Shown piece by piece: positions 14,962 to 53,707 of a stretch of 64,000 nt of DNA (its first letter is position 1; each line of letters opens with the position of its first letter). The DNA lies in IMG/VR virus record IMGVR_UViG_3300007352_000001, positions 1 through 64,000 of that record; one strand, written 5' to 3'. The notes beneath the pieces are model-generated. The model made no database searches and was not told where the DNA came from. It worked only from the letters and a program-made list of their open reading frames with translations. The translations under genes and the position numbers were made by a program.

Positions 14962-15144
14962 ATGGCGAGCAAAGAGCAGATCAACGCCGCAATCGAGCTG
15001 GTCATGCGCAAGGCGCCGATCGACCAAGTCACGGCTGCGCTGATCGAGGATCGCACCTTCCACGTCCGCGCGATCGGACAGGCGAAGGGACCGGGCGAGC
15101 CGCGTGCCGCGTCCGGGCTCAAGCGCACGCGCAAGCTCTGCTGA
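14962..15144 (+). CDS. small protein made mostly of the helical tag
   Basis: AAGGA RBS; INAAIELVMRKAPIDQVTAALIE. Confidence 0.6.
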   Translation: MASKEQINAAIELVMRKAPIDQVTAALIEDRTFHVRAIGQAKGPGEPRAASGLKRTRKLC

Positions 15145-15166
15145 AGCGCTGCCTGAACTGTGGATC

Positions 15167-15748
15167 GTGAAGCTGAACCTCGGCGCGCACGGTACGCGTC
15201 TCCCTGGCTTCCTCAGCGTCGATCTCCTGCCGGACACGCAGCCGGACATCGTTGGGAATCTCCTCACCATCGAGTTCGCCGACGCCTCGATCGAGGAGAT
15301 CTACTGCTCGCACACGCTGGAGCACTTCACGTACCTGCAGGCCTTCGCCCTACTGGAGAAGTTCGAGCGCTGGTTGATGCCCGAGGGCATTCTCTGGCTC
15401 GCCGTGCCGGACTTCGAGGCGCTCTGTCAGATCGTCACGGCCGGTGAAGGGCACAGCGCGCACATCCGCGGGCTCTTCTACGGCGGCGACCACTACGAGA
15501 CCGACGTGCACAAGAGCGGCTGGACCCGCCGCTTCCTGCGCGAGGTCCTCGAAGCACGAGGCTACGAGATCATCGGAGACTGGAACGCGTTCGTCACCAA
15601 CGCCGAAGGCGATGGCAGCGATGCGGCTGGGGTCTGGTTCGAGTGGAGTGACGGCCGGCGCCAAACGCTCTCGCTCAACTGGCGATGTCGGAAGGTGGGT
15701 GGCGGTGGCGCATCGAGAGCAGGCGGACTTCCTACACCGGGTGCGTGA
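15167..15748 (+). CDS. class I SAM-dependent methyltransferase (paralog of 6992..7558)
   Basis: KLNLGA, YCSHTLEH, ILWLAVPD. Confidence 0.88.
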   Translation: MKLNLGAHGTRLPGFLSVDLLPDTQPDIVGNLLTIEFADASIEEIYCSHTLEHFTYLQAFALLEKFERWLMPEGILWLAVPDFEALCQIVTAGEGHSAHIRGLFYGGDHYETDVHKSGWTRRFLREVLEARGYEIIGDWNAFVTNAEGDGSDAAGVWFEWSDGRRQTLSLNWRCRKVGGGGASRAGGLPTPGA

Positions 15749-16286
15749 GAAGTTCCCCGAGAGCTTCCGCGGCACGCGCGTCCTGGAGATTGGCTCCTAC
15801 AACGTCAACGGCACCCCGCGTGCCTTCTTCGAGCAGTGCGAGTACACCGGCCTCGATCTGCTGCCAGGGCCGGGCGTCGACGTCGTCGGCGTCGCACACG
15901 AGTACGATCTGCCGGACGCCAGCGTCGACGTCGTGCTCTCGTGCGAGTGCTTCGAGCACAACCCGTACTGGGCCGAGACGCTTGGCTGGATGGTGCGCGT
16001 CCTGCGCCCCGGCGGGCTCTGTGTCATCACCTGCGCTACCACCGGCCGTCCAGTGCACGGCACGTGGTCGACGGACGCCGACGGGCGGGCGGCACACGAG
16101 CAGTGGGTGACGTTGCCGAACGCGCAGTGCGAGCGGCCAGGGTGGGACCGCGACTACTACCGCAATCTCACCGAGGCCGACTTCCGCTCTGTGCTTTCGA
16201 TCGGCGGCGCGTTCACCGAGTACGTGTTCGAGATCGACACCAACCACTGTGACCTCTTCTTCTGGGGTCGGAAACGAGTCCGCTGA
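15705..16286 (+). CDS. class I SAM-dependent methyltransferase
   Basis: VLEIGSYNVNG, GLD..PGPGVD, SCECFEH, LRPGG. Confidence 0.88.
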   Translation: MAHREQADFLHRVREKFPESFRGTRVLEIGSYNVNGTPRAFFEQCEYTGLDLLPGPGVDVVGVAHEYDLPDASVDVVLSCECFEHNPYWAETLGWMVRVLRPGGLCVITCATTGRPVHGTWSTDADGRAAHEQWVTLPNAQCERPGWDRDYYRNLTEADFRSVLSIGGAFTEYVFEIDTNHCDLFFWGRKRVR

Positions 16287-17161
16287 TGCAAGTCGCCATT
16301 GGGGTTCCCAGCTGCATCTACCCAGAGGGGCTGTTCCACTTGGGGCGTTCGATTGCGGCGGCAACCCAGCACGATCACTACCGTTTGACGGTACTCCTCG
16401 ACGGCAACCGCGACTGGCAGCGGCTCGATCGCATGCCGGAGTATCAGGCGCGGTTCACCACGCTGAAGCTCCACGACGATCCCGAGACCGACCACCAGCG
16501 GATCGAGCGCAACAACCCGAACGTCGGCGACTACGCGTTCCTGCAGGGCTGGCATGCGGCCGGCACTGAAGTGATCCGTCACGCGGAGCGTCGCGGCGTC
16601 ATCGCGGCTTGGAACACGCTGGCGATGCATCTCCTCCAGACCGATGCCGACTACATCGTGATCATGAACGACGACGTGGTCGTGCAGCCTGGCTGGCTGA
16701 ACTACCTGCTGGGCTGCGCCAACAAGGGCTACCCGAAGGGCATCATGTTCGGCTTCGGCAGCGCCGGCACGCCGTCGCATCCTGGTCCGGCATGGCCGGG
16801 GCTGAAGGAAGAGAACTTCTGGGGGCCGTGTCTGTTCCTGCGCGCGAGCTGTGTGCGCGAGCTGATCGGCGATCGCGGCTGGGTGTTCAACCCCGAGTTC
16901 ACCGTCTTCAACTCCGACGGCTGGTTCATCCAAGAAGCCCTCGGCCGCGGCTTCGACATCGTCTCGATCGCCGACCCGCTGAAGCTGAGCACTGTCTGGC
17001 ACCGCTCGCTCGGGCACTGGGTGTACGACGAGGTCATGCGCGACCGTGCCCGCGTCGACGAGTACCACCGCGTCGGCAACTACCCGGCGGCGAACGGCAA
17101 GCTCTTCACCTACGTGCGGATGAACGACGCGTACGACGTCATCGACGAGAAGCTCCTCTAG
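16286..17161 (+). CDS. GT-A fold (GT2-like) glycosyltransferase
   Basis: GVIAAWN...DYIVIMNDDVVVQPGWL. Confidence 0.75.
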   Translation: MQVAIGVPSCIYPEGLFHLGRSIAAATQHDHYRLTVLLDGNRDWQRLDRMPEYQARFTTLKLHDDPETDHQRIERNNPNVGDYAFLQGWHAAGTEVIRHAERRGVIAAWNTLAMHLLQTDADYIVIMNDDVVVQPGWLNYLLGCANKGYPKGIMFGFGSAGTPSHPGPAWPGLKEENFWGPCLFLRASCVRELIGDRGWVFNPEFTVFNSDGWFIQEALGRGFDIVSIADPLKLSTVWHRSLGHWVYDEVMRDRARVDEYHRVGNYPAANGKLFTYVRMNDAYDVIDEKLL

Positions 17162-17198
17162 TTGACAAACTCCACAGATCCCTGCTGAATGGCAGACG

Positions 17199-17720: not shown

Positions 17721-18345
17721 GCGCACCCAGGGGCTGATGCCCGCCAAGCACCTGTCGGTTGTCGGCGGGGTCTACATCGGCAACGGGAAGTCGATCCCTG
17801 TGCGGCTGGTGGATTTCGACGGCGAGCGGCGTGAGCTGACGGTCGAGATCGTGGCGGACACCGACCACGAGATCAAACCGTTGAAGATGCTCTACATCGA
17901 CGGCCGCGCGTTCACGTACTTGCTGACGCAGCCGCACTTCCGGACCGACGGTGGTACGATTCGGTTCGTCTACCTCGAACACGTGGCCGGGACGTCGCTC
18001 ATCGACCAGCCGCGTAACTTCGCAGTGCAATACTGGCCCGCTCCGATTGCTGTCGCACAAGAGCTTGGGGTGCGCGGCACGCTCTACTGCGTTGCCGGCA
18101 CGCCACATCGCCAAGGGGGTACGTTGCCGCACAACGTGCACGACGAACACGAGGGCAAGCTCGAAGTCATGGGCTACGACCCGAGCCGCCAGATCACGCT
18201 CTACTTGAACAGCTCGCTGAACGTCTCGTGGCAATCACCCAGTGCCGCCCGTTTGTCCGCGTTGCTGCTGGACCGCCCGCAGCCTGGTCAGCTCGTGCTG
18301 CCGAGCACGCAGCTCCAGTACCAGCTCCCCATCGCCCATGAGTGA
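17692..18345 (+). CDS. hypothetical protein
   Basis: ORF with plausible composition; start uncertain. Confidence 0.55.
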   Translation: MSTRAQRRRRRTQGLMPAKHLSVVGGVYIGNGKSIPVRLVDFDGERRELTVEIVADTDHEIKPLKMLYIDGRAFTYLLTQPHFRTDGGTIRFVYLEHVAGTSLIDQPRNFAVQYWPAPIAVAQELGVRGTLYCVAGTPHRQGGTLPHNVHDEHEGKLEVMGYDPSRQITLYLNSSLNVSWQSPSAARLSALLLDRPQPGQLVLPSTQLQYQLPIAHE

Positions 18346-19180
18346 CGAGTACGACGACGTCGGCTTCGTGGCGCACCACACGCGGTTCCGGCACACCCCG
18401 AGTCTCGACCAGCACCGCACCCTTTTCCAATCGCTCCTCCGGCTCCCTGGCGTCGTGCCGTACCGGCAGAAGATGCAAGTCGGCCGCGATGAACAACACG
18501 GCTTGGGCGCCCTCGTGCAAGACCAGGCACGCCGCCGTGAGATCCTCGCGGAGATCCGGGCGATCGCAACTGACCACAAGGTCGGCATCGACCTCGTGCA
18601 GCGGCGCACCAGCGAGTACGTCGATCGCGTCTTGAAGGGCGAACTGCCCGGTCAGTACTCCGACGATCTCGCCGTGCAGAAGGCATGCGTCGGCTGCTCA
18701 GACATCGGCTACTTGGACGACGACGGGCTCTGCGCGAAGTGCATCGCGCGCGTGACCTACCACGTCGTCGACCACGAGACAGCCACCGACCGCTTCCACG
18801 TGGTGAATCAACTCTACGGCGTGCGTGTGTTCGCCTCGAACAACAAGGGCGAGGCCGACAGCGCGGCGCGTGACTGGACCGCCGGCCGGCGCGCGAAGGC
18901 CCGCCAGGGCATCTTCATGAACGCGGGCGAGGCGATCGACGCCGTCGCCCACGGGCAGCCGGTCCGCGGCGCCGCGAAGACGCTCACCAAGAAGACCTTC
19001 GTCCGCAATGACGTCGTCGAGTTCACTGATGGTGCGGGGATCCTGCAACGCGGAGTGGTCCTCCGTGCCCACCGTACGGTGCATGGGCTTGGGTATGTTG
19101 TCCAGGTCACCCGGACGCAGCACAATGTCTGGGTGGTGGCCGCGGATCTCCGCAAAGCGAACCCCGAGCACTGGCAATGA
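18338..19180 (+). CDS. multi-module hypothetical protein (zinc ribbon, internal helical tag, C-terminal SH3-like barrel)
   Basis: CVGC...CAKC; MNAGEAIDAVAHGQPV at 18917. Confidence 0.65.
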   Translation: MSDEYDDVGFVAHHTRFRHTPSLDQHRTLFQSLLRLPGVVPYRQKMQVGRDEQHGLGALVQDQARRREILAEIRAIATDHKVGIDLVQRRTSEYVDRVLKGELPGQYSDDLAVQKACVGCSDIGYLDDDGLCAKCIARVTYHVVDHETATDRFHVVNQLYGVRVFASNNKGEADSAARDWTAGRRAKARQGIFMNAGEAIDAVAHGQPVRGAAKTLTKKTFVRNDVVEFTDGAGILQRGVVLRAHRTVHGLGYVVQVTRTQHNVWVVAADLRKANPEHWQ

Positions 19181-19184
19181 TCCG

Positions 19185-19652: not shown

Positions 19653-20243
19653 ATGAACCTGGCATTGGACGAGGGGCGTCAGCCCGGCCACTTCAACACC
19701 GCCAAGCGCAACGCGCGCAATGACGCGACGCGCCGCGGCCACAACCTCGGCACGTGGAACAACACGGGCTTCGGTGCGCACGTGGCGGTGTGCAAGGACT
19801 GCAACGCACAGGTGCGCGTGCGGATCACGCCCGACCAGAAGGAATCGTGGATCGAGTCGAAGCCGGCCCTGGCGACCGATTGGTCCGAGGGACAGCCAGA
19901 AGGTGGCGTCTGCCGCACGCGCAAGCCGACCTACGGCGGTGGTGGCCGCGGTGGAATGGCCGAGCACGTCATCGACGCCGTCATGAACGGCGCGGGGGTG
20001 CTCGAAGCGATCAAGGACTTCCGCACGGCCTATCCAGACGGTACCAAGGTGCCGATGACCGCCGACGATCACCGGCCGATCGGCCAGCGTCCACGTGGGC
20101 TCAACTACTCGCACCGCAAAGTGTTGAAGCAGATGCGGGCCACGGGCCGCACCGCGTACGACGACCTGCAGGCGCAGCAGAACCCTCGCCCGCATCTTCC
20201 GTGCGGAGGCTGCGGTCACCCGAACTGCGGCTACTGCGCCTGA
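19653..20243 (+). CDS. hypothetical protein with zinc ribbons and internal helical tag
   Basis: CKDC, CGGC..PNCGYC; MAEHVIDAVMNGAGV at 19956. Confidence 0.65.
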   Translation: MNLALDEGRQPGHFNTAKRNARNDATRRGHNLGTWNNTGFGAHVAVCKDCNAQVRVRITPDQKESWIESKPALATDWSEGQPEGGVCRTRKPTYGGGGRGGMAEHVIDAVMNGAGVLEAIKDFRTAYPDGTKVPMTADDHRPIGQRPRGLNYSHRKVLKQMRATGRTAYDDLQAQQNPRPHLPCGGCGHPNCGYCA

Positions 20244-20249: not shown

Positions 20250-20639
20250 TTGATCGTGCCGGTCAGTGACATCCGCAAGAATCACAAGGGGCACTTCTTC
20301 GATCGCGACACGATGCGGTTCTTCAAGAGCCGCGCCCATGACCGTTCGTACGAAGGCCCCGGTGGGCACTACTTCGTGACCAGCGAGCAGCAGCCGCGCT
20401 GGGGCGGTGGCCACCAGCGCCGGCACTACAAGGTGCGCAGCTACGACTCTGCGGCTGACCGCATCACCTCCGCGGGCGAGTTCCTCGGCTACAAGACCGC
20501 GCGCCGCGCGCATCGCGCTGCCTCGAAGCTCGCACTCACGCCGCGCAAGATGAAAGTCGCCGAGGCAGCCACTGCGTTGCTTGCCGGGACGCCTGTCGCC
20601 GAAGCGATTACGGCGATCGTCGAGGGCGAGCGCGAGTAG
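20250..20639 (+). CDS. conserved phage protein (HFF...TMRFF.SR type) with C-terminal helical tag
   Basis: AAGGAGG RBS; HFFDRDTMRFFKSR...YFVTSE recalled as a widespread uncharacterised phage domain. Confidence 0.7.
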   Translation: MIVPVSDIRKNHKGHFFDRDTMRFFKSRAHDRSYEGPGGHYFVTSEQQPRWGGGHQRRHYKVRSYDSAADRITSAGEFLGYKTARRAHRAASKLALTPRKMKVAEAATALLAGTPVAEAITAIVEGERE

Positions 20640-20640: not shown

Positions 20641-22344
20641 ATGTCACTCTTTCGTAGGGCGGGGCACGCTGCCTGGATCGCTCCGTCCGGCGAAGTGCAC
20701 CCGCTCGACACCAACGAAGGCCACTGGCTCTGGGTGGAGAAGAATCGGCACCGGATTCCGGAGTCGCTCCATCGCCCGACCGCGGAGCAGACCGGCTACA
20801 ACATGATCCAGCGCGGCTGGATTCGTCAGGCAGCGCCGAACGCGTACCACATCGGCCGGCCGCAGGACGTCCGCCGCGTGCGCGATCACGTGCTCATGCA
20901 CCATCCGAAGCTGAAGACGGTCTTCGTCGATCAGATGGGCGGGCCGTCACGTGAGGTGGATGTGCACGAAGATCTCGAAGGGCTTGCTCAAGCGCGTGCC
21001 GCCACGCACCCGGCGCCGAGCGAGGCGCAGAAGCGCGCGGGCAACTACGCCAAGGGCAAGGTGCAGCTGCACGGGATGACGATCGCCATCGAGAACGCCA
21101 GGGGCTCGCTGCGCACCGGCGTCTCGAAGGCCGGAGTGCGCTGGTCGAACCGGATGAAGCACGACTACGGCTACATCCTGGGCACGCTCGGCAAGGACAA
21201 GGATCATCTCGACGCGTTCGTCGGACCGCACCACGAGTCGGAGCTGGTGCACGTCATCGACCAGTACCGTCCCGACAGCGGCGCCTTCGACGAGCACAAG
21301 ATCGTCTTCGGGGCGCGGTCAACAGCTGAGGCCAAGGACATCTACCACTCCAACTACGCGAAGGGGTGGAAAGGGCTGGGACACATCACGCCGATGCACG
21401 TCACCGAGTTCAAGGCCTGGTTGGCGCACCACAACACGATGAGCCCGATGCACGCACAGCGCCGCGCGCCGCACGACACCTTCCGCACGGTGCGCGAGGC
21501 GATCGCCGCCGTCGCGGACGGTGTCGCCCCGGCCGACGTCATCGAGTCAGGTTGGGACGATGCGGTCTATCTGCGTGGCCGGCACGGCGCGTGGCTGAGC
21601 CCGCGCGGGAACTTCCACCCGCTCCAGCGTGGCGAGCTACACAAGGACTGGGTGCACTCGCACGCCAAAGAGCTGGGCGTGAAGGTCCCCAAGCGTCCGG
21701 GCCGCACCGCACCAGGCATGGGCGACACCACCGAGGTCGAGCATGATCTTCTGCGCTCGGGCTGGGTGAAGAAGTCCGACGCCACGACGTACGAGGCGCA
21801 CTCGGCTGAGCCGCGCGTGCTGCGCAGTATCCGGCAGCACATGCGCGAGTATCACCCCGACGAGTCGCACTTCGCGTTGCAGGTCGGCAAGGTCGGGGCC
21901 GGCGCCACCGGTCACTACCTGCCGGTCTGGGAAGGCCTCGACGAGGGCGACGTCATCCGTCCGCCGGTGGCCTGGTGGAACGATCCAGTGCGCATCAAGT
22001 TGCCGATGAAGGGACAGGTGGTGCCGATCAGTCACGGCGTGCATGGCCGGACGCCCCGGCCGACCGCGACCCCCATTGACCCCGTTGCGTTCGAGAAGGG
22101 CGTTGCCAAGCTCCGCGGAGTCCGTGCGGCGCTCGACCACACTGAGCTGAGCCACCGCTCGAAGCTGCCGTGCCCGCAGTGCAAGGGGCCGACCTCCATG
22201 CGCGTGACGCGCCGCGCCACGATCCACACGTGCAAAGACGGGTGGTGCAAGCACGAGTTCACCAAGCCGCTCGCGGAAGAGCGCGAGCGCGATGCTGTCG
22301 CCGAGTGGCATCGTCGCCTCAAGCAAGCTCTCGGACAGGAGTGA
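20641..22344 (+). CDS. polyvalent-type multidomain protein: W-x-x-P-x-G domain, inorganic-pyrophosphatase-like domain, helical tag, second W-x-x-P-x-G domain, zinc ribbon
   Basis: PSEAQKRAGNYAKG...IEN..GS.R.G...DYGYI.GT.G.D.DHLD.F...FDEHK matches the polyvalent-protein InPase domain. Confidence 0.8.
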   Translation: MSLFRRAGHAAWIAPSGEVHPLDTNEGHWLWVEKNRHRIPESLHRPTAEQTGYNMIQRGWIRQAAPNAYHIGRPQDVRRVRDHVLMHHPKLKTVFVDQMGGPSREVDVHEDLEGLAQARAATHPAPSEAQKRAGNYAKGKVQLHGMTIAIENARGSLRTGVSKAGVRWSNRMKHDYGYILGTLGKDKDHLDAFVGPHHESELVHVIDQYRPDSGAFDEHKIVFGARSTAEAKDIYHSNYAKGWKGLGHITPMHVTEFKAWLAHHNTMSPMHAQRRAPHDTFRTVREAIAAVADGVAPADVIESGWDDAVYLRGRHGAWLSPRGNFHPLQRGELHKDWVHSHAKELGVKVPKRPGRTAPGMGDTTEVEHDLLRSGWVKKSDATTYEAHSAEPRVLRSIRQHMREYHPDESHFALQVGKVGAGATGHYLPVWEGLDEGDVIRPPVAWWNDPVRIKLPMKGQVVPISHGVHGRTPRPTATPIDPVAFEKGVAKLRGVRAALDHTELSHRSKLPCPQCKGPTSMRVTRRATIHTCKDGWCKHEFTKPLAEERERDAVAEWHRRLKQALGQE

Positions 22345-22346
22345 TC

Positions 22347-23822
22347 GTGAACCCAGGAGTGCGCCTCGCCATCGACTTCGCCACGCAAGGCACGCCGGTG
22401 AGCGTGCTCGCCGAGGCGCTCATCAACGAGATCACCAAGGGCCATCTGAGCGCCCTCATGGCGCACGACCCGCACGCCCTCATCTACCACCCGCAGATCG
22501 AGCAGGGCGGGGAGCGCGAGACGATCGACTGGCACACGCGCAAGAAGCGCAACCCCGGCGAGGACGTCACCCGCTACACTGACGATCTCCGTCCCGAGGT
22601 CCGTGCGCAGTTCCGCTCGCCGAAGGAAGGGGCGTACCGCAAGACCGACCTGACGGTGGTGAAGGCGCACATGGGCCACCCGCTCTACTCGCGTTCCGCG
22701 GTGGCCCCCAACCTCCACGGCAAGCCGAGCGGCCGGCCGGCGCCGTCGATCTCCGGGGAGCACCTCGACTTGATGACGCACGCGGCCAAGGGCCAGGCGG
22801 AATCGCGTCACTGGTACGAGCACATCGCGCCACACGTGCAGCGGATCTTCGACTCTCCGCACTACAAGGACTCACACATGATCATGGGCCTGCTGGCGGC
22901 GTACTCGCCGCAGACCCACCCGCACCCGAACGTCCACAAGGCACTGCGTGGCTGGCGCGATCTGATCCAGGGCAAGCCGCTGATCGGCTCGCACTCGGAC
23001 AACACCAACGCGCTGCGCGCCGCGCATGGGATGCACCTCTCGGGGCCGAAGGTCCACTGGTACAACCGCAACATGCAGCACGGCATCACGCCGACGGCGA
23101 CGACGCCGACCGGGGATCCGATCGGCTCGGTCGACCACCCGACCAACGATCGGCACATGAAGTACGCCTTCCTGCGCGACTACGACGACGAGACGGTGCA
23201 CCCAGAGCAGCACGTCGCGATCACGCAGGCGACGCGGCACGTCGCCAACAAGCTCGGCTGGGGCCAGCACCAGGCGCAGGCCGCGGTGTGGGCGCACGAC
23301 ATCCGTACCACGGGCCTGAACGATCCGTCGTTCCACACGCCGGGCTCGCCGTTCAAGAAGCTCTCGCAGCGCTACGGGGGCTACCTGCCGGTTGTCGACG
23401 ACAAGAAGCCGATCCAGGACTACGGCCAGTTCTTCCGCGAGAACGAGCACGCGCTGCGCGGCATGAAGCACGAGATGGATCAGTACCGCATGTACCACCC
23501 GAACTACCGTGAGCACGCTGGCAAGGGGACGCCGTTCCTCTTCCACCCGGCAGGTATTCGCGGCGCGGCGATCAAGTACGGCCACGAAGTCTCGGCCGAG
23601 CACTTGTCGAACGCGCGCGAGGGGAAAGCGGTCCTCACCGATCTGAAGAATCGCGACATCACCCGCACCGATCCCAAGTCGGGATGGGAGATCGGCCCGA
23701 CTTCCGGCGCCTTCACCGGTCGGAAGAAGGATGTCGTGCGGCCGAACGTGTCGTTCGTGCACCCGACGCAGAAGCGCGTCACCCGCAAGGACCTCAAGAA
23801 CCTGGAACCGGCACCGTTCTGA
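22347..23822 (+). CDS. His-rich protein with N-terminal helical tag and HhH-glycosylase-like (DUF7178-like) domain
   Basis: HWYE, LLAAYSPQ, LSGPKV, DRHM, AQAAVW motifs in order. Confidence 0.6.
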   Translation: MNPGVRLAIDFATQGTPVSVLAEALINEITKGHLSALMAHDPHALIYHPQIEQGGERETIDWHTRKKRNPGEDVTRYTDDLRPEVRAQFRSPKEGAYRKTDLTVVKAHMGHPLYSRSAVAPNLHGKPSGRPAPSISGEHLDLMTHAAKGQAESRHWYEHIAPHVQRIFDSPHYKDSHMIMGLLAAYSPQTHPHPNVHKALRGWRDLIQGKPLIGSHSDNTNALRAAHGMHLSGPKVHWYNRNMQHGITPTATTPTGDPIGSVDHPTNDRHMKYAFLRDYDDETVHPEQHVAITQATRHVANKLGWGQHQAQAAVWAHDIRTTGLNDPSFHTPGSPFKKLSQRYGGYLPVVDDKKPIQDYGQFFRENEHALRGMKHEMDQYRMYHPNYREHAGKGTPFLFHPAGIRGAAIKYGHEVSAEHLSNAREGKAVLTDLKNRDITRTDPKSGWEIGPTSGAFTGRKKDVVRPNVSFVHPTQKRVTRKDLKNLEPAPF

Positions 23823-25536: not shown

Positions 25537-25719
25537 ATGCCCACCACGCATGAGCTAGCCGACCAGCTGCTCGACGCCATCGACAACGGCATGCCCGTCG
25601 ACGAAGCGGTCGAGGCCGCGATCAACGAAGCGCCCGCCAAGGGTCCGCGTATGATCCGGTTCGGCACGAGCAAAGAGCGCCTCGGCGCTCGCCCGATCGC
25701 ACAAGCACGCCAGCAGTAA
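25537..25719 (+). CDS. small protein made mostly of the helical tag
   Basis: AAGGAG RBS; LLDAIDNGMPVDEAVEAAINE. Confidence 0.65.
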   Translation: MPTTHELADQLLDAIDNGMPVDEAVEAAINEAPAKGPRMIRFGTSKERLGARPIAQARQQ

Positions 25720-26897: not shown

Positions 26898-27271
26898 TGA
26901 ACGAGGCGCGTAAGCCGCGGCGTCAGTTCCAGGTCAACGTCAACAGCCTCTGGCAGCCAGATGACTGGCAGACCGGTGCGTCGTTCTCCGTCGGCGGCAC
27001 CGGACCCGGCAAAGCCGCGCTGCAACGGATCCTGCGGGATCTCACGCCGCGCCCGAAGGGGAAGAAGAAGATGAACAACGAGAGCGCCGCAGAGGTGGTC
27101 ATCGCGCGCGTGATGAACGGCGAGCTGATCGAAGACGTGGTCGCCGAGATGACGCACTGGCCGGCAGTGCCGACCTATCGCGTTGTCCCCAAGCCGAAGC
27201 CGGCGCCGCAACCGAAGCCGCAAGTGAGTCCCAGCGCGCACGCGTCGATGCCGAAGTCGTGGGGCAAGTGA
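26897..27271 (+). CDS. hypothetical protein with internal helical tag
   Basis: TGATG coupling; MNNESAAEVVIARVMNGELIEDVVAE at 27071. Confidence 0.6.
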   Translation: MNEARKPRRQFQVNVNSLWQPDDWQTGASFSVGGTGPGKAALQRILRDLTPRPKGKKKMNNESAAEVVIARVMNGELIEDVVAEMTHWPAVPTYRVVPKPKPAPQPKPQVSPSAHASMPKSWGK

Positions 27272-31988: not shown

Positions 31989-32402
31989 ATGAGTGGAGCG
32001 ACTTCGTTCGCCCAGCTGGTCGCGGCCCACATGGACGGGATGCACCCGACGTCTGTCGTCGAGAGCATGCTGGGTCCGGATCGCACGGACGACTTCACCA
32101 GTGACGACGTGCGAGCCCGCGAGTTCACCCGCATCGCCTCGCAAGCAGCGTCGGCCTTCCCGTACATCGGGCCGGACTGGATCGGCACGATCGCGCAGGC
32201 AGTCCGCCAGGCTGATGCGCAGGGCATGCAGGAACTCGTCCGCATGTCTACCCAGAACCGTGATCAGTATGCGGGCACCGCCCGCATCGACTCTGACGGG
32301 TCGTTCGCGCTCTGGGACGCGATTCTCAAGGGGCTGCTCGCGGTGCCGACCACCCAGCTGCCGCCGCCCGCCCCGCCGCTGAACACGGCCCCGCTTCCGT
32401 AA
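31989..32402 (+). CDS. hypothetical protein with N-terminal helical tag
   Basis: AGGAGG RBS; FAQLVAAHMDGMHPTSVVES. Confidence 0.7.
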   Translation: MSGATSFAQLVAAHMDGMHPTSVVESMLGPDRTDDFTSDDVRAREFTRIASQAASAFPYIGPDWIGTIAQAVRQADAQGMQELVRMSTQNRDQYAGTARIDSDGSFALWDAILKGLLAVPTTQLPPPAPPLNTAPLP

Positions 32403-34683: not shown

Positions 34684-36294
34684 ATGTCGGATCCCGTTAC
34701 CTCCCCGCTCCTGCTGGAGGAGACGCGCATCTTCACGCCCCAGATCGTGGAGCGCGCAACGCCCGGTGGTCGTCTGCGACTGCAAGGCATCTACCAGCTC
34801 GGCGAGGTCGTCAACCAGAACAAGCGTCGGTACCCGAACCCGCTCTGGGATCGGTTGCTGGGGGAAGGTTCCGCGTTTCAGAACCGCGTCCGCGCTCGCC
34901 GTGTACTCGGCGAACTCGGGCACCCCAAGGACGGCAAGACGCTCCTCGAACGCGTCTCGCACCTGATCACCAAGACCTGGATCGACCCCAACGGGCGGCG
35001 TGACTGTCTCGCCTGCGAGCAGAGCCTCAACCCCGGCCACTACCACGTCATGGCCGAGGAAGAGGTGCTCAACACGCCGCACGGGAAGATCCTGGGCGAA
35101 CTCTACGAAGCTCAGGTCGAAACCGGCGTTTCCTCGCGTGGCCGCGGCACGCTCGTCCCGATGGGCGAGTACTCCAACGTCAACGACGACTACGCCATGG
35201 AGACCTTTGACCACGTGCTCGATCCGAGCACGCCTGGTGCGATGCCGCGCGTCGTGTCCGAGAACGTCGTCGGCGTCATCTCCCGCTTCGCCAACTGCGA
35301 CGCCACCCCTGCGGAACTGCAGGGGTACCGTTCCATCCTGGCTGAGGTGACCGAATCGGCCGCGCCCGAGATCCGTTCCAACGCCCACGCGGTGATGGAA
35401 GCGATCGAGGTGCGTCTTGCCAACGCGAGTCGTGGACAGGTGCAGTGCTCGGTGCCGGCGTCGGCACCCCTGCTGCACATGTCCGACAGTGATTCTCGCG
35501 TCGAGTCCCCTCTCGCCGCAACCCCAACCCTGGAGGCACGCATGACCATCACCAAGGACCTGCCCGAGGTCCGTGCGATTGTCGCCGAGGCCGTCCGCGA
35601 GCACGAGGCATCGCTCCGCACGCAGTTTGACACCGCCATGTCCGAGATGGTCGCGACGGTGGAGAGCCTGCAGCAGGAGCTGCTCGCGTCGCAGCAGCGC
35701 AATGAGGCTGCTGACCTCGTCGGCAATGAGCTGGTCTCCCAGCTCAAGGAAACGAATCTGAAGCTCACGGCGTACTCGACCGCGAACAGCGGTGGGCATG
35801 ACGTGCTGCAGAAGTTCGACACCGCCAAGGGCGTGATCGAGGAACTCATCGAGCACGTCCGCAGCCTGCGCTACGCCGAGGCCCGCGCCGATGCGGCCGA
35901 GCGTCTCCTCTCCGAGGTGGTCGCTCGCACGCAGCGCGAGCATCTGATGGCGCACGTCGACCGCCTGCTCCAGGTGGTCCCCGAAGAGCACGTCGGCCGC
36001 GTGAAGCCGTTCCTCACCGAGGCGAGCAGCATCGCCGAGGCGAACCGTCGCTTCTCCACCGTCACCGCCGCGCTCATCACCGAGGCGCCGGAGACCGAAC
36101 AGCCGGCCGCGGTGCGTACCGACGGCGCACTCCCGCCGACCGCGGGACACCACGCCGCCGCCCTCACCGAGTCGACCACGCTCGTCGGCACTCCTACCCA
36201 GGGGACGCAGGCCGGGCAGCAGGTCAACGAGAGCGTGAACATCACCCGCGCGATGGTGCGCCGGCTGTCCGGCCGCACCGCCGTCGGCGCGTAA
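34684..36294 (+). CDS. gp21: T4 gp21-type prohead protease fused to a scaffold-like coiled coil
   Basis: NQNKRRYP, GELGHP, LNTPHGKI, GVSSRGRG, FDHVLDPST; coiled-coil C-terminal half; directly upstream of the capsid gene. Confidence 0.9.
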   Translation: MSDPVTSPLLLEETRIFTPQIVERATPGGRLRLQGIYQLGEVVNQNKRRYPNPLWDRLLGEGSAFQNRVRARRVLGELGHPKDGKTLLERVSHLITKTWIDPNGRRDCLACEQSLNPGHYHVMAEEEVLNTPHGKILGELYEAQVETGVSSRGRGTLVPMGEYSNVNDDYAMETFDHVLDPSTPGAMPRVVSENVVGVISRFANCDATPAELQGYRSILAEVTESAAPEIRSNAHAVMEAIEVRLANASRGQVQCSVPASAPLLHMSDSDSRVESPLAATPTLEARMTITKDLPEVRAIVAEAVREHEASLRTQFDTAMSEMVATVESLQQELLASQQRNEAADLVGNELVSQLKETNLKLTAYSTANSGGHDVLQKFDTAKGVIEELIEHVRSLRYAEARADAAERLLSEVVARTQREHLMAHVDRLLQVVPEEHVGRVKPFLTEASSIAEANRRFSTVTAALITEAPETEQPAAVRTDGALPPTAGHHAAALTESTTLVGTPTQGTQAGQQVNESVNITRAMVRRLSGRTAVGA

Positions 36295-36333: not shown

Positions 36334-37860
36334 ATGATCACTGCCAATCTGGTGGAACAGACGAGTGGTCGTGGCCTGAGCGACAACTTCCTGTCGCTGG
36401 GTCGCGTCCTCTCCGAGGAGCGCTGGGCCGACTACTGCAACGACCCCGAGATCCCCATCGCAGAAGACGCGACCCGCTACGGTCTCGCGTGCATGCTGGA
36501 GAATCTCGATCGCTTCCTCGGTCAACTCGACGAGACCACGCGCGCGGTCGCGATCGGCGACTTCCAGAAGTACGCCTTCCCCCTCGTCCGCGCCATCTTC
36601 CCTGAACTCGTCGCGAACAGCCTGGTGTCGGTGCAGCCGATGCTCGGCCCCACGAGCCTGATCTTCTACCTGGACTTCGTCTACGGGACGAACAAGGGCT
36701 CGGTGCGTCGCGGTGACACCGCCTTCTCGGCGGTGGCGCGCGGCCCGAACAACCCATCGTACACCTCGCCGAACGTCGACGAGGAGCAGGTCGCGACTGG
36801 CGACGGCACCACGGTGGCGTTCACCGCGAACATCTCCTTCACCCCGATCGTTCCGTCCTCGATCGTCATCACCGACGGCATCCAGGTCGTGACCGACAAC
36901 GGGGCGGGCGGTGTGACCGGCGACGCGTCGGCCGGCTCGGTCAACTACGCCAACGGGTCGCTGGCCGTCACCTTCAGCTCGGCGCCGTCGTCGGGCACCC
37001 CGATCACCGTGTCGTACACGTACGACATGGAAGCCAACCCCCTCCTGCCGGAGATGGACCTGGTGCTGCAGAGCACCCCGGTCATGGCCCGGCCGCGCAA
37101 GCTCAAGACCAAGTGGTCGCTGGAGGCGGCGTTCAACCTCCGCTCGCTGCATGGTCTGGAGGCTGAGGTCGAGTTGACTTCGGCCGTCGGCAGCGAGATC
37201 CGCTTCGAGATCGACCGCGAGGTCATTCTCGATCTGCAGAAGCTCGCGGGCGCGGGCTCGGTGTTCTGGAACAAGGACCTGCCGCAGGGCGTGTCCTTCA
37301 CCGAGCAGAAGCTGTCGATCATCGACACCTTCGTCACCGCCTCGAACCTCATCCACAAGACGACTGGTCGCGGCACCGCCACCTGGATCCTCGGTGGCGA
37401 GGGCGTGGCCAACGTCATCGAGACTCTGCCCGGCTTCGTGCCGACGCCGGGTCTCCCGAGCGGTCTCGTCAAGGGCGTGTACCGCGCGGGCCGTCTGAAC
37501 GGGCGCTGGGACTTCTTCAAGGACCCGTTCTACACGGACAACTTCTTCATGATGGGCTACAAGGGCATGAGCTTCCTGGAAGCCGGCTACGTGTACGCCC
37601 CGTACATCCCGCTCTACACCACGCCGACGATCGTCCTGGACGACTTCATCGCGCGCAAGGGTCTCGCCACGCAGTACGGCAAGAAGGCGGTGAACCCGCT
37701 CTTCTACGTCACCGGTGAGGTCGACCGCGGTCTCGCTCTGGAGACCAAGGCTGGTGTCGCCGCGGGCACCATCTCGTCGAGCGGTCAGGCCGTCCTGACC
37801 CACGGTTCGGCGAAGGAAGACCTCGGCCTGGCAACGGGCCGCGGCGTCTTCGGCATCTGA
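36334..37860 (+). CDS. gp23: T4 gp23-type major capsid protein
   Basis: LVSVQPMLGPTSLIF, RKLKTKWSLEAA, EIRFEIDREVI, AGYVYAPYIPL, KGLATQYG. Confidence 0.96.
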   Translation: MITANLVEQTSGRGLSDNFLSLGRVLSEERWADYCNDPEIPIAEDATRYGLACMLENLDRFLGQLDETTRAVAIGDFQKYAFPLVRAIFPELVANSLVSVQPMLGPTSLIFYLDFVYGTNKGSVRRGDTAFSAVARGPNNPSYTSPNVDEEQVATGDGTTVAFTANISFTPIVPSSIVITDGIQVVTDNGAGGVTGDASAGSVNYANGSLAVTFSSAPSSGTPITVSYTYDMEANPLLPEMDLVLQSTPVMARPRKLKTKWSLEAAFNLRSLHGLEAEVELTSAVGSEIRFEIDREVILDLQKLAGAGSVFWNKDLPQGVSFTEQKLSIIDTFVTASNLIHKTTGRGTATWILGGEGVANVIETLPGFVPTPGLPSGLVKGVYRAGRLNGRWDFFKDPFYTDNFFMMGYKGMSFLEAGYVYAPYIPLYTTPTIVLDDFIARKGLATQYGKKAVNPLFYVTGEVDRGLALETKAGVAAGTISSSGQAVLTHGSAKEDLGLATGRGVFGI

Positions 37861-42506: not shown

Positions 42507-42809
42507 ATGCCAACTACGGTTCCGCAAGCCATCCAAGCGGTTTTGGACGGACATTCCACAAAAAGTCTGGTGGAAGCCCTCCTCGAAGGCCGCAAAATCA
42601 CCCGGTGGTGGCAGGCGCATGCTGGGGACCTCGTGACCGACATCACGATGGGACAACCGGCCGGCGTCGGGCGCGTGAAGCGCCAAGACAAGAATGCCCG
42701 CGTGGAAGTCGAGTGGCTGTCTCACCCGCACTACAAGGGCAGGACGTTCACGCACACCCAAGGGGAACTGCGGAAGCTGCGCAAGCCTGGGGAAGGGAGC
42801 CAGCAATGA
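42507..42809 (+). CDS. helical tag plus SH3-like domain protein
   Basis: QAIQAVLDGHSTKSLVEALLE, then AGDLV...GRV...VEVEW. Confidence 0.7.
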   Translation: MPTTVPQAIQAVLDGHSTKSLVEALLEGRKITRWWQAHAGDLVTDITMGQPAGVGRVKRQDKNARVEVEWLSHPHYKGRTFTHTQGELRKLRKPGEGSQQ

Positions 42810-49241: not shown

Positions 49242-49242
49242 T

Positions 49243-50037: not shown

Positions 50038-50057
50038 GGCACAGGAGAATAGGCACG

Positions 50058-50321: not shown

Positions 50322-50330
50322 GGTGAGGGC

Positions 50331-51904: not shown

Positions 51905-52194
51905 TCGACGAGTTCCCAGCCTTGCGCGGCTGGTACAAGATCACGCCACAGGCGGTCGAGTTGCGTGGCCGGGGAATCTCGCCGCTTGCGCCGATACATG
52001 TGTGTACCGGTCCGCCGGTGATCGAGTGCCAGTTTGACGACGATCGCTTGAAGCTCGAAGAATACCTGCGCCGGCAGATGAACGAGGAAGCCTGGCGGCT
52101 CGACATGCAGCTGCGACACTTCCGTGGGCGGCTAGGAAGCGTCGGCTCGTTTTCGCTCCAAGGACCTGCGCCGCGAACGGAGAACTACCCGTGA
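51895..52194 (+). CDS. tag-array protein 7 (tail GSVGSFSLQGPAPRTENYP)
   Basis: Shared motif variant; 10-nt overlap. Confidence 0.72.
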   Translation: MSLIDEFPALRGWYKITPQAVELRGRGISPLAPIHVCTGPPVIECQFDDDRLKLEEYLRRQMNEEAWRLDMQLRHFRGRLGSVGSFSLQGPAPRTENYP

Positions 52195-52379
52195 TGGACT
52201 CTGGGACGACCTATAAGCGTGGCCCTGCCCGCACCGGTGGTGAACAAGACGTGATCTCGCGCCGCTGGCGCAAGATGCTCTGCTACTGCGTCCGCACGGG
52301 CGTCACGGCGAAGATCAAGCGCGGCATCCGCCGCCGCGAACGCCGCGAGGGGCGGCACGAGGCACAGAGCGAATGGTAA
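52194..52379 (+). CDS. small basic hypothetical protein
   Basis: TGATG coupling; Arg-rich. Confidence 0.55.
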   Translation: MDSGTTYKRGPARTGGEQDVISRRWRKMLCYCVRTGVTAKIKRGIRRRERREGRHEAQSEW

Positions 52380-52966
52380 ACGAACGCTTCTTCGATCGCT
52401 CCGGGCCAGATGGGCTCGAAGGTGGGCAGGGCGGGGTCGCTGGCGGCTCTCCTAACTCCGAGTTCTCCGGTGGTGGCGCGAACAGCCAAGCCGGTCGTTG
52501 TCCGAGCTGCAACGCCAACTTCCCAGTCGACGATCCGAACCGGACGACGTTCTGCCCTGAGTGCGGGCAGCAGCGGCAGGGCGTGGTGGCGACGGCGGCA
52601 GCCCAGCAGCGCGGCGGGTGGGGCGTCTACGGCACTGGCCGGCCGGGCTATCTGCGTGTACCGGGCGGGCCGATCTCGACCAATGAAATGGCCGGCAAGC
52701 TCCGGCTCAAGTATCTCGGCGGCAATCTCTTCGAGATGGAGATGCAGGGCGCGACGCTCGAACACGCGCTCTCATCGTCGCACTCGGTGATGTCGCATCG
52801 CCTGCGGGCTCTTGGTATGAACCAGGATCGCGTGATGCAGACGCTGATCCACTGGCTCTTCAACGAGGCCAAGGCGGGACAGGAGTACGTGTGGGATCTC
52901 GCAGGCGGCACGCGTATGGTGGTCGACGAACGCGGTTTTCGTCGCCACGTCGAAGTTTCGGAATAA
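52373..52966 (+). CDS. zinc-ribbon hypothetical protein
   Basis: CPSC...CPECG. Confidence 0.65.
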   Translation: MVNERFFDRSGPDGLEGGQGGVAGGSPNSEFSGGGANSQAGRCPSCNANFPVDDPNRTTFCPECGQQRQGVVATAAAQQRGGWGVYGTGRPGYLRVPGGPISTNEMAGKLRLKYLGGNLFEMEMQGATLEHALSSSHSVMSHRLRALGMNQDRVMQTLIHWLFNEAKAGQEYVWDLAGGTRMVVDERGFRRHVEVSE

Positions 52967-53199
52967 CCGACGACTTCGACGACGTCCCGGAGTTGAACAG
53001 CCTCCCGAAGCTCGACATCGAGTTCGCCCCGCCGGTGAAGCGCCGCTCGCGGCGACTCGACGGCTGGACGCACCAAGACAGACCCTTGCGTGTCGAGGGC
53101 GTCGCCCCACCAGCAATCGACCGGCGCAAGCCGTTGCGCCGCGGACAAGTCGGCTACGCCTCGCGTGGCCGGCGCAAGAGGACGATCGACGATGCGTGA
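52963..53199 (+). CDS. small protein with GQVGYASR motif; apparent ATA start
   Basis: In-frame ATA overlaps the upstream TAA (ATAA); fills the gap exactly. Confidence 0.4.
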   Translation: MTDDFDDVPELNSLPKLDIEFAPPVKRRSRRLDGWTHQDRPLRVEGVAPPAIDRRKPLRRGQVGYASRGRRKRTIDDA

Positions 53200-53707
53200 T
53201 GTCTCCGCGGCGATCAGTGCGATTCTCGACGGCGCGGCCGTGCCGGTGATCGCCGAGGCGATGATGCGCATGGGCATGGGTGCCCCGCCGCCGGTCAACA
53301 CCGGCGCCACCGGCGAAGCCGAGGATCGCAAGCACGCCGCGTGGATCGAGCCCAACGGCCGTACGCACGTGCTCGGCAGGGAAGAGATTCACGGCGACTG
53401 GGCCACGGCACGGCCCGAGATGTGGCCCAAGCGAGCGTACGCGGTCTACCGCGCCGCGGCCGGCCGCGGCGACGACACCTACCACGACGAATCGCGGCAA
53501 ATGAGCCGCATGATGAAGGCCGGGTGGGTGCGCAAGGCTGGCGCCGCCGCGTACCACGTCCACGCCCGCGAGCAGATCCCACGGGTCCTCGCCCACGTGC
53601 GCCGCTGGCATCCAGACGTCGACGAGTTCCATGTCGACGTCGGCTCGCCGAAGATCAAGACGACGGTCACGATGAACGCGCACACCGGGTGGCCGGTGCG
53701 GAGGTAG
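53192..53707 (+). CDS. helical tag plus W-x-x-P-x-G domain protein
   Basis: AAISAILDGAAVPVIAEA; AWIEPNG...H..W...AGWVRK. Confidence 0.7.
   Translation: MRDVSAAISAILDGAAVPVIAEAMMRMGMGAPPPVNTGATGEAEDRKHAAWIEPNGRTHVLGREEIHGDWATARPEMWPKRAYAVYRAAAGRGDDTYHDESRQMSRMMKAGWVRKAGAAAYHVHAREQIPRVLAHVRRWHPDVDEFHVDVGSPKIKTTVTMNAHTGWPVRR

What the first reader, a model, noticed from the sequence alone, without database searches (positions are those of the whole stretch)
14962..53270. A roughly 23-aa helix-Gly-helix tag on 12 unrelated proteins: candidate capsid-targeting and injection signal
Seen, aligning essentially without gaps: INAAIELVMRKAPIDQVTAALIE (14962), AGEAIDAVAHGQPVRGAAKTL (18917), AEHVIDAVMNGAGVLEAIKD (19956), VAEAATALLAGTPVAEAITAIVE (20550), VREAIAAVADGVAPADVIES (21490), VRLAIDFATQGTPVSVLAEALINE (22347), ADQLLDAIDNGMPVDEAVEAAINE (25537), AEVVIARVMNGELIEDVVAE (27071), FAQLVAAHMDGMHPTSVVES (31989), GEAILQRIMYAHEDVRDVIE (41142, one gap), VPQAIQAVLDGHSTKSLVEALLE (42507) and VSAAISAILDGAAVPVIAEA (53192). 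It is N-terminal in 6, internal in 5 and C-terminal in 1. Two 60-aa genes are almost only the tag, and four non-N-terminal copies start at an in-frame Met, as if tagged genes had fused. Known: T4 internal proteins carry a short capsid-targeting sequence removed by gp21 after (L/I)-x-E, and this window encodes a gp21 protease. Inference: a longer helical-hairpin packaging tag that loads many cargoes (pyrophosphatase-like, glycosylase-like, SH3, zinc ribbons) into the head for injection.
Basis: partly seen in the sequence, partly recalled or inferred. Interest (0 to 1): 0.9.

Follow-up and report, generated by a model that had tools for sequence, protein, structure and literature searches.

The report
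Shared helical-hairpin tag on phage proteins
A 241-kb uncultured phage with a T4-type head attaches the same ~24-residue acidic helix-turn-helix label to at least eleven otherwise unrelated proteins, and the evidence fits (but does not prove) a new kind of address tag that loads proteins into the phage head.

Summary
Eleven of the twelve listed copies form one gap-free motif family; 41142 is not supported and 14962 is the weakest. The core is h-I-[DE]-x-V-h-x-G-x-x-P-x-x-V-h-E.

- **Not generic helices.** A profile finds only these copies in all six frames of the window, and none in about 340 kb of other phage DNA (T4, LIS04 and Molly included).
- **Clade-wide.** It finds 42 further copies in relatives with 37-69% GC.
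- **Conserved and modular.** Orthologues keep the tag. It folds as a confident helical hairpin and is added on to complete known domains (DUF7447, InPase, 2H phosphoesterase).

Three lines support head targeting:
- In relatives, 22 of 25 copies lie just upstream of the major capsid gene.
- A blind search of 1.84 billion proteins recovered a two-tag protein two genes before an S77 protease and a Gp23 capsid gene.
- 81% of tags end in the [LIV]-x-E site typical of T4-type prohead proteases.

The tag has no sequence similarity to the T4 capsid-targeting sequence, and no Pfam or PHROG family covers it. Packaging, cleavage and injection are untested.

The parts
14971..15048 (+). Tag copy, N-terminal in the 61-aa gene 14959-15144 (tag plus a basic tail). 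Weakest member: Lys replaces the turn Gly.
   Evidence: Leave-one-out gives 0.3 bits and the external model 3.1 bits.
18914..18991 (+). Tag copy, internal (aa 193-218 of 280) in gene 18338-19180. An in-frame Met starts it.
   Evidence: Leave-one-out 9.4 bits; external model 8.2 bits.
19950..20027 (+). Tag copy, internal (aa 100-125 of 196) in gene 19653-20243, preceded by a Gly-rich linker and a Met.
   Evidence: Leave-one-out 11.6 bits; external model 6.4 bits.
20547..20624 (+). Tag copy, C-terminal (aa 100-125 of 129), following a complete DUF7447 domain in gene 20250-20639.
   Evidence: Pfam DUF7447 covers aa 5-91. Of 28 family members only this protein and its 73%-identical relative carry the tag; the relative's copy scores 13.7 bits with the external model. 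AlphaFold gives helices 100-111 and 116-128.
21481..21558 (+). Tag copy, internal (aa 263-288 of 549) in gene 20695-22344, between the InPase domain (aa 110-243) and a C-terminal region.
   Evidence: Pfam InPase, E = 8e-51. Leave-one-out 15.2 bits; external model 10.7 bits.
22350..22427 (+). Tag copy, N-terminal in the 493-aa DUF7178-family gene 22341-23822.
   Evidence: All five family members (37-57% identity) keep the tag, with an invariant Gly17 and an invariant Glu30 in [LIV]-x-E. The orthologue in L006 also carries it.
25549..25626 (+). Tag copy, N-terminal in the 60-aa gene 25537-25719 (tag plus a disordered basic tail).
   Evidence: Leave-one-out 15.2 bits. AlphaFold: helices 4-16 and 21-30 with pLDDT above 90; aa 31-60 have pLDDT about 60.
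27080..27157 (+). Tag copy, internal (aa 62-87 of 124) in gene 26897-27271, flanked by Lys-rich and Pro-rich linkers. The in-frame Met has a purine-rich stretch upstream.
   Evidence: External model 9.4 bits.
31998..32075 (+). Tag copy, N-terminal in the 137-aa gene 31989-32402, the first gene of the head-morphogenesis block.
   Evidence: Orthologues in L002 (52% identity) and L017 (43%) keep the tag and its V-V-E / I-I-E. External model 12.7 bits.
42510..42587 (+). Tag copy, N-terminal in the 100-aa gene 42507-42809, inside the neck/virion module.
   Evidence: Leave-one-out 12.3 bits; external model 8.6 bits. Neighbours are an adaptor-like protein and a virion structural protein.
53192..53269 (+). 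Tag copy, N-terminal in the 171-aa gene 53192-53707. This accessory gene is absent at the same place in relative L006.
   Evidence: Leave-one-out 11.6 bits. L006 lacks the gene between the orthologues of its neighbours.
34684..36294 (+). Prohead protease (Peptidase_S77, aa 31-187) fused to a ~340-aa helical tail. It is the presumed processing enzyme and scaffold, and the inferred docking partner of the tags.
   Evidence: Pfam and PHROG hits. [LIV]-x-E density is 5.0 per 100 aa against 1.44 in the proteome. No separate scaffold gene lies before the capsid gene.
36334..37860 (+). Gp23-type major capsid protein. The candidate maturation site L-D-E at aa 65-67 has an invariant Glu67.
   Evidence: Pfam Gp23, E = 4.8e-59. 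Four-sequence alignment A2; sequence.

Best explanation
The ~24-residue acidic helical hairpin is a portable prohead-targeting module. Its form is: helix 1, then a G-x-x-P turn, then helix 2 ending in [LIV]-x-E.

Proposed mechanism (all steps inferred):
1. Proteins carrying the hairpin dock through it onto the scaffolding core that forms before the shell closes. The likely partner is the long helical tail fused to the S77 protease.
2. They are trapped inside the prohead.
3. The gp21-type protease then cuts after the Glu at the end of the tag. N-terminal tags are removed, and internal tags act as cleavable linkers that split two-domain precursors.
4. The freed proteins stay with the DNA and can leave with it at infection. 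These are small basic proteins and enzymes such as the InPase, DUF7178 and DUF7447 proteins here, and 2H phosphoesterase, zincin and NUDIX proteins in relatives.

Shown: the motif family, its modular add-on nature, its fold, its conservation, its restriction to this clade, and its clustering at head genes.

Not shown: docking, cleavage, retention and injection.
For: **1. A real, specific, protein-level motif.**
- Members score at least 23.6 bits; the next best protein scores 2.4 bits.
- There are no off-frame hits in the window.
- The profile finds no hit of 6 bits or more in about 340 kb of phage DNA in which no tag was found: unrelated InPase phages (145 kb), T4 (90 kb), LIS04 (31 kb), Molly (31 kb) and the next ~48 kb of the same genome.
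- Clade loci hold 53 copies on the coding strand and 1 on the other.
- Similarity lies at codon positions 1 and 2, not 3, and persists from 37% to 69% GC.

**2. Modular.**
- It is appended to complete Pfam domains.
- Only 2 of 28 DUF7447 proteins carry it.
- It can be N-terminal, internal or C-terminal, and one family shows both N-terminal and internal positions.
- It is a confident hairpin next to a disordered tail or a folded domain.

**3. Link to the head.**
- In relatives, 22 copies lie upstream of the capsid gene and 3 downstream (p = 4e-4).
- Two or three tagged small genes sit just before the protease, where T4 has its core genes 67 and 68.
- A blind profile search of 1.84 billion proteins returned P0003 (two tags), which lies two genes upstream of Peptidase_S77 and Gp23 genes.
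- Within 0-101 kb of this genome, all copies lie at 14.9-53.3 kb, on the structural-gene strand.

**4. Protease logic.**
- [LIVMA]-x-E lies 5-14 residues after the Gly in 43 of 53 tags, against 17% in the background.
- That Glu is invariant in the two orthologue families examined.
- T4 gp21 cuts after L/I-x-E, and SPN3US gp245 cuts after A-x-E (PMC9026906; PMC10052503).
- The capsid protein has an invariant L-D-E at the expected maturation site.

**5. Cargo types.**
- InPase and 2H phosphoesterase domains are predicted to be packaged and injected when fused to MuF or portal domains in other phages (PMC5512222).
- The 30 residues after a tag are basic on average (+1.8 against -0.1, p = 3e-4) while the tag itself is acidic (-2.8). 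T4 internal proteins are described as basic in PMC9026906.
Against: - There is no direct evidence: no virion proteome, no observed cleavage, and no partner identified.
- The phage is uncultured and its host is unknown. No relative was found in 50,697 phage records or 185,579 genomes.
- The tag does not resemble the T4 capsid-targeting sequence. T4-type targeting sequences are N-terminal and 10-20 residues long, whereas five copies here are not N-terminal.
- Eight of the window's copies, and the eight in L033, sit among enzyme genes rather than recognised structural genes. The link to the head for those rests on strand and proximity alone.
- The conserved Glu could simply be part of an amphipathic helix.
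- Part of the relatives' tag set was found by iterating a profile seeded from this window. The strand and position statistics are therefore not fully independent of the seed, although the first, non-iterated pass already showed the pattern.
Confidence: 0.5

Rival explanations
1. The hairpin is a general docking or oligomerisation module for a hub that is not the capsid. Candidates are a host factor, a chaperone, or a phage replication or transcription factory. It would recruit many enzymes to one place inside the infected cell.
For: - Most tagged genes in the window (14.9-27 kb) and in L033 and L043 lie among enzyme genes: methyltransferase, glycosyltransferase, DHH, NT5C, endonuclease VII and NUDIX.
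- Several proteins carry two or three copies, which would suit avidity-based recruitment.
- Tags work in any position in the chain.
Against: - This does not explain the concentration just upstream of the protease and capsid genes.
- It does not explain the conserved protease-type site at the tag's end.
- It does not explain why the tag is restricted to one capsid lineage and absent from other phages carrying the same enzyme domains.
Confidence: 0.2
2. The tag marks assembly-only prohead-core proteins, functional counterparts of T4 gp67 and gp68. Hairpins would pack with each other or with the scaffold to build the core, and would then be degraded and expelled. Nothing would be delivered to the next host.
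For: - The conserved tagged genes (31989 and its orthologues; the family L019:3977 / L020:6047 / L028:982) sit where T4 has genes 67 and 68.
- The best, though very weak, T4 match of the profile is gp68 aa 37-63, which also ends in I-N-E.
- Multi-tag proteins could cross-link a core.
Against: - Enzymatic cargo domains (InPase, 2H, zincin, NUDIX) have no obvious role in a scaffold.
- Tagged genes vary between relatives like accessory genes.
- The gp68 resemblance is not significant (3.9 bits; hhalign P = 0.025, probability 1.9%).
Confidence: 0.15
3. The motif is the first two helices of a degenerate helix-turn-helix DNA-binding domain of the transposase type (HTH_Tnp_1).
For: The tag profile cross-hit a protein made of HTH_Tnp_1 repeats, P0004, at 41 bits over six stretches.
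Against: - No tagged protein matches any HTH family in Pfam, even at E = 1.
- The models show no third (recognition) helix; a disordered tail or the chain end follows.
- The tag is acidic (net -2.8).
Confidence: 0.05
4. It is chance or composition: generic Ala-rich amphipathic helices of a high-GC proteome picked out by eye, or a DNA-level repeat.
For: - Five copies score at decoy level in leave-one-out.
- PDB proteins such as type III RuBisCO reach 14 bits by chance.
Against: - A model built from other contigs ranks the claimed copies first.
- There are no hits in decoys, reversed sequences, other frames or control phages.
- Orthologues conserve the tag.
- The motif is present in 37% GC relatives.
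- Codon position 3 is no more alike than the background.
Confidence: 0.02

Closest known systems
Capsid-targeting sequence (CTS) of T4 internal proteins IPI, IPII, IPIII and Alt (Mullaney and Black 1996, as summarised in PMC9026906 and PMC3012670)
   Same: A short shared peptide sits on otherwise unrelated proteins, in a phage with a Gp23-type capsid and a gp21-type protease. It ends in a hydrophobic-x-Glu protease site. The cargoes are diverse and vary between relatives. Alt shows that propeptides at both ends of one protein occur.
   Different: - About 24 residues folded as a helical hairpin, against about 10 residues in T4.
- No sequence similarity: the tag models score below 3 bits on ipI, ipII and ipIII.
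- Five of the eleven supported copies in this window are internal or C-terminal.
- It is carried by enzymes of several hundred residues.
- Function is untested here.
T4 prohead core proteins gp67 (PF17634) and gp68 (PF26830)
   Same: Small proteins encoded directly upstream of the protease gene. The N-terminal part is helical and acidic, the tail (in gp68) is very basic, and gp21 cuts them. The tagged genes of this clade occupy the same genomic position.
   Different: Homology is not supported: 3.9 bits for gp68 aa 37-63, hhalign P = 0.025 with probability 1.9%. gp67 and gp68 are single genes, not a tag shared by many proteins.
Polyvalent proteins and MuF- or portal-fused effectors (Iyer et al. 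2017, PMC5512222)
   Same: They share cargo domains (InPase and 2H phosphoesterase; NUDIX is mentioned there only as a neighbour or fusion partner of InPase). The predicted logic is also the same: enzymes packed in the virion and delivered with the DNA.
   Different: There, targeting comes from covalent fusion to MuF or portal domains within giant multidomain chains. Here the domains are separate small or medium genes, each with its own short tag, and no MuF domain was detected in the tagged proteins.
N-terminal propeptides of giant-phage head proteins (SPN3US, phiKZ; PMC10052503, PMC5694885)
   Same: An S77-type protease removes propeptides after x-x-Glu. Two SPN3US propeptides are 20 and 24 residues long.
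   Different: The searches run here turned up no description of a common sequence motif shared by those propeptides, and most of them are 111-254 residues long.
Helix-turn-helix coat-binding domain at the C-terminus of the P22 scaffolding protein, and encapsulin cargo-loading peptides (from my own knowledge; not tested here)
   Same: A small helical hairpin or short peptide is enough to carry a fused protein into an HK97-fold shell.
   Different: - The P22 hairpin is basic and binds the coat protein, whereas this tag is acidic.
- Neither of the two is removed by a protease.
- No similarity was detected in the PDB searches.

Membership tests
T4-type capsid-targeting sequence (CTS) | One short peptide shared by otherwise unrelated proteins of one phage | tested here: met
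   Eleven proteins share it and have no other shared domain.
T4-type capsid-targeting sequence (CTS) | N-terminal propeptide of 10-20 residues | tested here: not met
   The tag is about 24 residues. Six copies are N-terminal, four internal and one C-terminal.
T4-type capsid-targeting sequence (CTS) | Ends at an L/I-x-E site for the gp21-type protease encoded by the same phage | tested here: met
   The motif is present in 43 of 53 tags against 17% in the background, and the Glu is invariant in two orthologue sets. The S77 protease is present. Actual cleavage was not testable.
T4-type capsid-targeting sequence (CTS) | Sequence similarity to the T4 IP propeptide | tested here: not met
   The three tag models give no hit of 3 bits or more on ipI, ipII or ipIII.
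T4-type capsid-targeting sequence (CTS) | Sufficient to carry a foreign protein into the prohead, and removed there | not testable with these tools
   Needs a packaging assay or virion proteomics.
T4 gp68 prohead core protein family (PF26830) | Detectable homology to gp68 | tested here: inconclusive
   The best T4 hit of the tag profile is gp68 aa 37-63, at only 3.9 bits. hhalign gives P = 0.025 and probability 1.9%.
Polyvalent proteins (Iyer et al. 2017) | Two to 15 disparate effector domains in one polypeptide, often with a MuF or portal domain | tested here: not met
   The tagged proteins have at most one recognised domain plus a tag. No MuF or portal domain was detected.
Polyvalent proteins (Iyer et al. 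2017) | Carries domains of the polyvalent repertoire (InPase, 2H) | tested here: met
   InPase at E = 8e-51 in gene 20695-22344. A 2H phosphoesterase with an N-terminal tag in L033.
HTH_Tnp_1-type helix-turn-helix domain | Three-helix bundle with a recognition helix, and a match to the family model | tested here: not met
   No HTH family matches at E up to 1. The models have only two helices.

The most novel reading that the evidence does not exclude
The hairpin is a universal, position-independent address label of a whole uncultured lineage of phages with T4-type capsids. Under this reading, any protein carrying it is loaded into the prohead, and internal copies double as protease-cleavable linkers. 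The full packaged and injected arsenal (counter-defence enzymes, small basic DNA-bound proteins) could then be read directly from genome sequence. New effectors would be recruited simply by acquiring the 24-residue cassette.
Probability: 0.35. Interest if true: 0.8.

Novelty: new variant of a known kind. Interest (0 to 1): 0.62.

Why it matters
Which proteins a phage carries in its head and delivers with its DNA is usually known only from virion proteomics of cultured phages.

If this tag is a packaging label, three things follow:
- The injected repertoire of an entire uncultured lineage becomes predictable from sequence.
- It becomes visible how new cargo is recruited: a portable cassette, gene fusion and loss.
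- A second capsid-targeting system, structurally different from the T4 one, becomes available for packing foreign proteins into phage heads.

It would also tie the "polyvalent protein" domains (InPase, 2H, NUDIX) to a different delivery solution: many separate tagged genes instead of one giant fusion.

Tried and rejected
- **Known families.** Pfam and PHROG scans of the tagged proteins and of the global hits found no family covering the tag.
- **Solved structures.** A PDB sequence-profile search gave only chance-level hits (a designed repeat protein, RuBisCO at 14 bits). Foldseek of the hairpin against the PDB gave nothing better than E = 2.
- **T4 as a relative.** No match to the IP targeting sequences. 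The gp68 resemblance is not significant. The N-terminus of gp67 looks alike by eye in helix 1 only and scores below 3 bits.
- **Ribosomal protein L7/L12.** I recalled from memory that its N-terminal hairpin looks similar. It did not appear in the PDB or Pfam searches, so I dropped it as anything more than an analogy.
- **DNA-level repeat.** Rejected from the codon-position analysis.
- **Internal translation starts.** Only 27071 has a plausible purine-rich stretch upstream. Met is enriched just before "internal" tags (12 of 25 against 17% expected), but the test is confounded by uncertain start sites in relatives.
- **Cultured relatives or prophages.** None found.
- **Whole-genome census.** Reached only 0-101 of 241 kb. 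Two contig look-ups failed, one because a GTG start gave a non-matching product and the other probably because of a different start call.
- **Copy at 41142.** Rejected.

Full report
**What the window is.** The window is the first 64 kb of a 241,426-bp viral contig, IMGVR_UViG_3300007352_000001. The same contig was assembled with a different origin in a second sample, so the genome is probably complete and circularly permuted. It has 66% GC and encodes a Gp23-type major capsid protein at 36334-37860 (Pfam E = 4.8e-59). It also encodes a Peptidase_S77 (gp21-type) prohead protease at 34684-36294, fused to a ~340-residue helical tail. No separate scaffold gene precedes the capsid gene. No cultured phage is close: the best capsid identity in 50,697 phage records is 38%.

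**Checking the observation.** All twelve strings are present at the stated coordinates and in the coding frame. My gene map and the independent JGI gene calls agree on the placements: six N-terminal, four internal (in proteins of 280, 196, 549 and 124 aa) and one C-terminal (129 aa).

- A profile of eleven copies scores its members 23.6-32.6 bits, while the next best of the 94 window proteins scores 2.4 bits.
- Across all six frames of the window, only these eleven sites reach 6 bits.
- Leave-one-out gives 9.4-15.2 bits for six copies, against at most about 6.5 bits among 4,700 shuffled decoys.
- A model built only from 42 copies found in other contigs ranks seven of the claimed copies as the top seven window proteins.
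- The copies at 22347 and 20550 score weakly, but their orthologues conserve the tag.
- 14962 has Lys at the turn position and is the weakest.
- 41142, the copy that needs a gap, scores below zero and I reject it.
- The similarity lies in codon positions 1 and 2 (0.43 and 0.47 against 0.27 and 0.26 in the background) and not in position 3 (0.42 against 0.39). Selection therefore acts on the protein, and this is not a DNA repeat.

**The motif outside the window.** Searches with the capsid protein and with tagged proteins found relatives in viral and metagenome collections, with capsid identity of 38-67% and GC of 37-69%.

- A profile seeded from the window found twelve new copies in about 130 kb of unseen relatives, all on the capsid-gene strand.
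- After iteration, the clade loci hold 53 copies on the coding strand and one on the other strand.
- The consensus, numbered from the Gly, is: -10 A/V, -9 E, -7 L/M/A, -6 I, -5 D/E, -3 V, -2 L/V, 0 G (52 of 53), +2 S/D, +3 P, +6 V, +7 I/L/V, +8 E/D.
- The profile gives no hit of 6 bits or more in 145 kb of unrelated phages carrying the same InPase domain, 90 kb of T4, 31 kb of Listeria phage LIS04 or 31 kb of Maribacter phage Molly. The last two are T4-capsid phages that also have protease-scaffold fusions. The next ~48 kb of this same genome also has none.

**Blind global search.** A profile search of 1.84 billion representative proteins gave 15 hits at E of 0.001 or better. One is low-complexity and one is an HTH_Tnp_1 repeat protein. 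The other 13 are small proteins with one to three clear copies, six of them at the extreme N-terminus.

**Modularity and fold.**
- AlphaFold, given the 36-copy alignment, predicts helix 4-16, a four-residue turn and helix 21-30 for the 60-aa protein, with pLDDT above 90. Residues 31-60 are disordered. By direct count from the sequence, that tail carries a net charge of about +5.
- In gene 20250-20639 the hairpin (helices 100-111 and 116-128) follows a complete, confidently modelled DUF7447 domain.
- Of 28 DUF7447 proteins, only this one and its 73%-identical relative carry the tag. In the relative, a Cys-rich domain follows the tag.
- In gene 20695-22344 the tag sits after a complete InPase domain.
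- In relative L033 it precedes a complete 2H phosphoesterase domain. In other contigs it is found on a zincin-like protein and inside a NUDIX protein.
- In the DUF7178 family (gene 22341-23822), all five members keep the tag, with an invariant Gly and an invariant Glu in [LIV]-x-E. One member has a 90-residue extension before the tag, so the N-terminal and internal positions interconvert.
- No Pfam or PHROG family covers the tag. PDB sequence and fold searches give only chance-level matches.

**Evidence on function.**

1. *Location.* In relatives, 22 copies lie upstream of the capsid gene (87 kb searched) and 3 lie downstream (72 kb searched), p = 4e-4. Typically two or three consecutive small tagged genes sit within a few kb of the protease gene. 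T4 has its prohead-core genes 67 and 68 in that position. P0003, recovered blindly from the global search, carries two tags and lies two genes before Peptidase_S77 and Gp23 genes. In this genome, every copy within 0-101 kb lies at 14.9-53.3 kb on the structural-gene strand. Gene 31989 opens the head block, and genes 42507 and 53192 lie among neck and tail-completion genes.

2. *Protease logic.* T4 gp21 cuts after L/I-x-E (PMC9026906) and SPN3US gp245 cuts after A-x-E (PMC10052503). Here 43 of 53 tags have [LIVMA]-x-E 5-14 residues after the Gly, against 17% for random spans of the same length. That Glu is invariant in both orthologue families examined. The capsid protein has an invariant L-D-E at the expected maturation site. 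The protease-scaffold protein has 5.0 [LIV]-x-E sites per 100 residues, against 1.44 in the proteome.

3. *Cargo.* Iyer et al. 2017 (PMC5512222) predict that InPase and 2H phosphoesterase domains are packaged and injected when fused to MuF or portal domains. The tags are acidic (-2.8), and the 30 residues after them are basic on average (+1.8 against -0.1, p = 3e-4). This charge pattern resembles T4 gp68. T4 internal proteins are described as basic in PMC9026906.

**Best explanation and its limits.** I conclude, at about 50% confidence, that the hairpin is a prohead-targeting module. It would dock onto the scaffolding core, most plausibly the helical tail of the protease, and then be cut by the S77 protease at its own end. 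This would release small basic proteins and enzymes that stay in the head. All of these steps are inferred; none is shown.

[quoted passage not shown] The present tag works like that system on paper but is not a member by sequence, by length or by position.

The main rivals are:
- a docking module for some other hub, because eight window copies and those of L033 and L043 sit among enzyme genes (confidence 0.2);
- an assembly-only core motif like gp67 and gp68, with no delivery to the next host (0.15);
- a degenerate HTH (0.05);
- chance (0.02).

**Caveats.**
- The relatives' tag set was enlarged by iterating a profile seeded from this window. The first, non-iterated pass and the blind global search already show the same pattern.
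- The census covers only 101 of 241 kb.
- Start sites in relatives are uncertain, which confounds the finding that Met is enriched just before internal tags (12 of 25 against 17% expected). That enrichment could reflect past gene fusions, nested translation starts, or mis-assigned N-termini.

Noticed in passing
window 25730-26314, 26307-26897, 27300-29036, 29440-31062 (+): Four untagged genes between the tag cluster and the head block begin with signal-peptide-like hydrophobic N-termini. Two have weak beta-propeller (PQQ_2) and beta-helix (NosD) matches, so the phage may encode secreted or envelope proteins.
   Followed up: no
window 34684-36294 (+): The prohead protease is fused to a ~340-aa helical tail, and there is no separate gp22-like scaffold gene. 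[LIV]-x-E sites are 3.5 times denser in this protein than in the proteome. The same fusion occurs in relatives and in Molly and LIS04.
   Followed up: partly
window 32656-33528 (aa 110-204) and 36334-37860 (aa 151-234): The 290-aa protein encoded upstream of the protease shares a ~90-residue segment with the capsid protein's insertion region. Both match the same stretch of a third gene in L017 and L019, and the 290-aa protein also matches inside the capsid gene of L020.
   Followed up: no
window 33610-34377 (+): A 255-aa protein with three zinc-ribbon-like Cys motifs is encoded between the head-block genes and the protease. It is conserved in L002 and L017.
   Followed up: no
window 53192-53707 versus L006 6877-7015: Tagged gene 53192 is missing between the orthologues of its two neighbours in relative L006, so tagged genes behave as accessory cassettes.
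   Followed up: partly
window 58593-59150 (-) and 61742-63313 (-): A SpoU-type RNA methylase and a PMT_2-like membrane glycosyltransferase are encoded on the opposite strand, inside the tail-gene region.
   Followed up: no
L033 1-10428 (JGI Ga0393273_0002535): A 10.4-kb contig with no detectable homology to the window carries eight tag copies on seven genes, including a 2H phosphoesterase. The tag system therefore extends beyond the relatives found through the capsid protein.
   Followed up: partly
L035 8024-8449 (T4 gene 68): The best T4 match of the tag profile falls in prohead-core protein gp68 (aa 37-63, ending in I-N-E), but at only 3.9 bits. It may hint at a very distant common origin.
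   Followed up: partly
window 1-64000: No portal or large-terminase gene was recognised by Pfam or PHROG among the proteins I tested. In relative L006 the tagged DUF7178 gene lies directly before the orthologue of the 882-aa gene 45125-47773, whose function is unknown.
   Followed up: no
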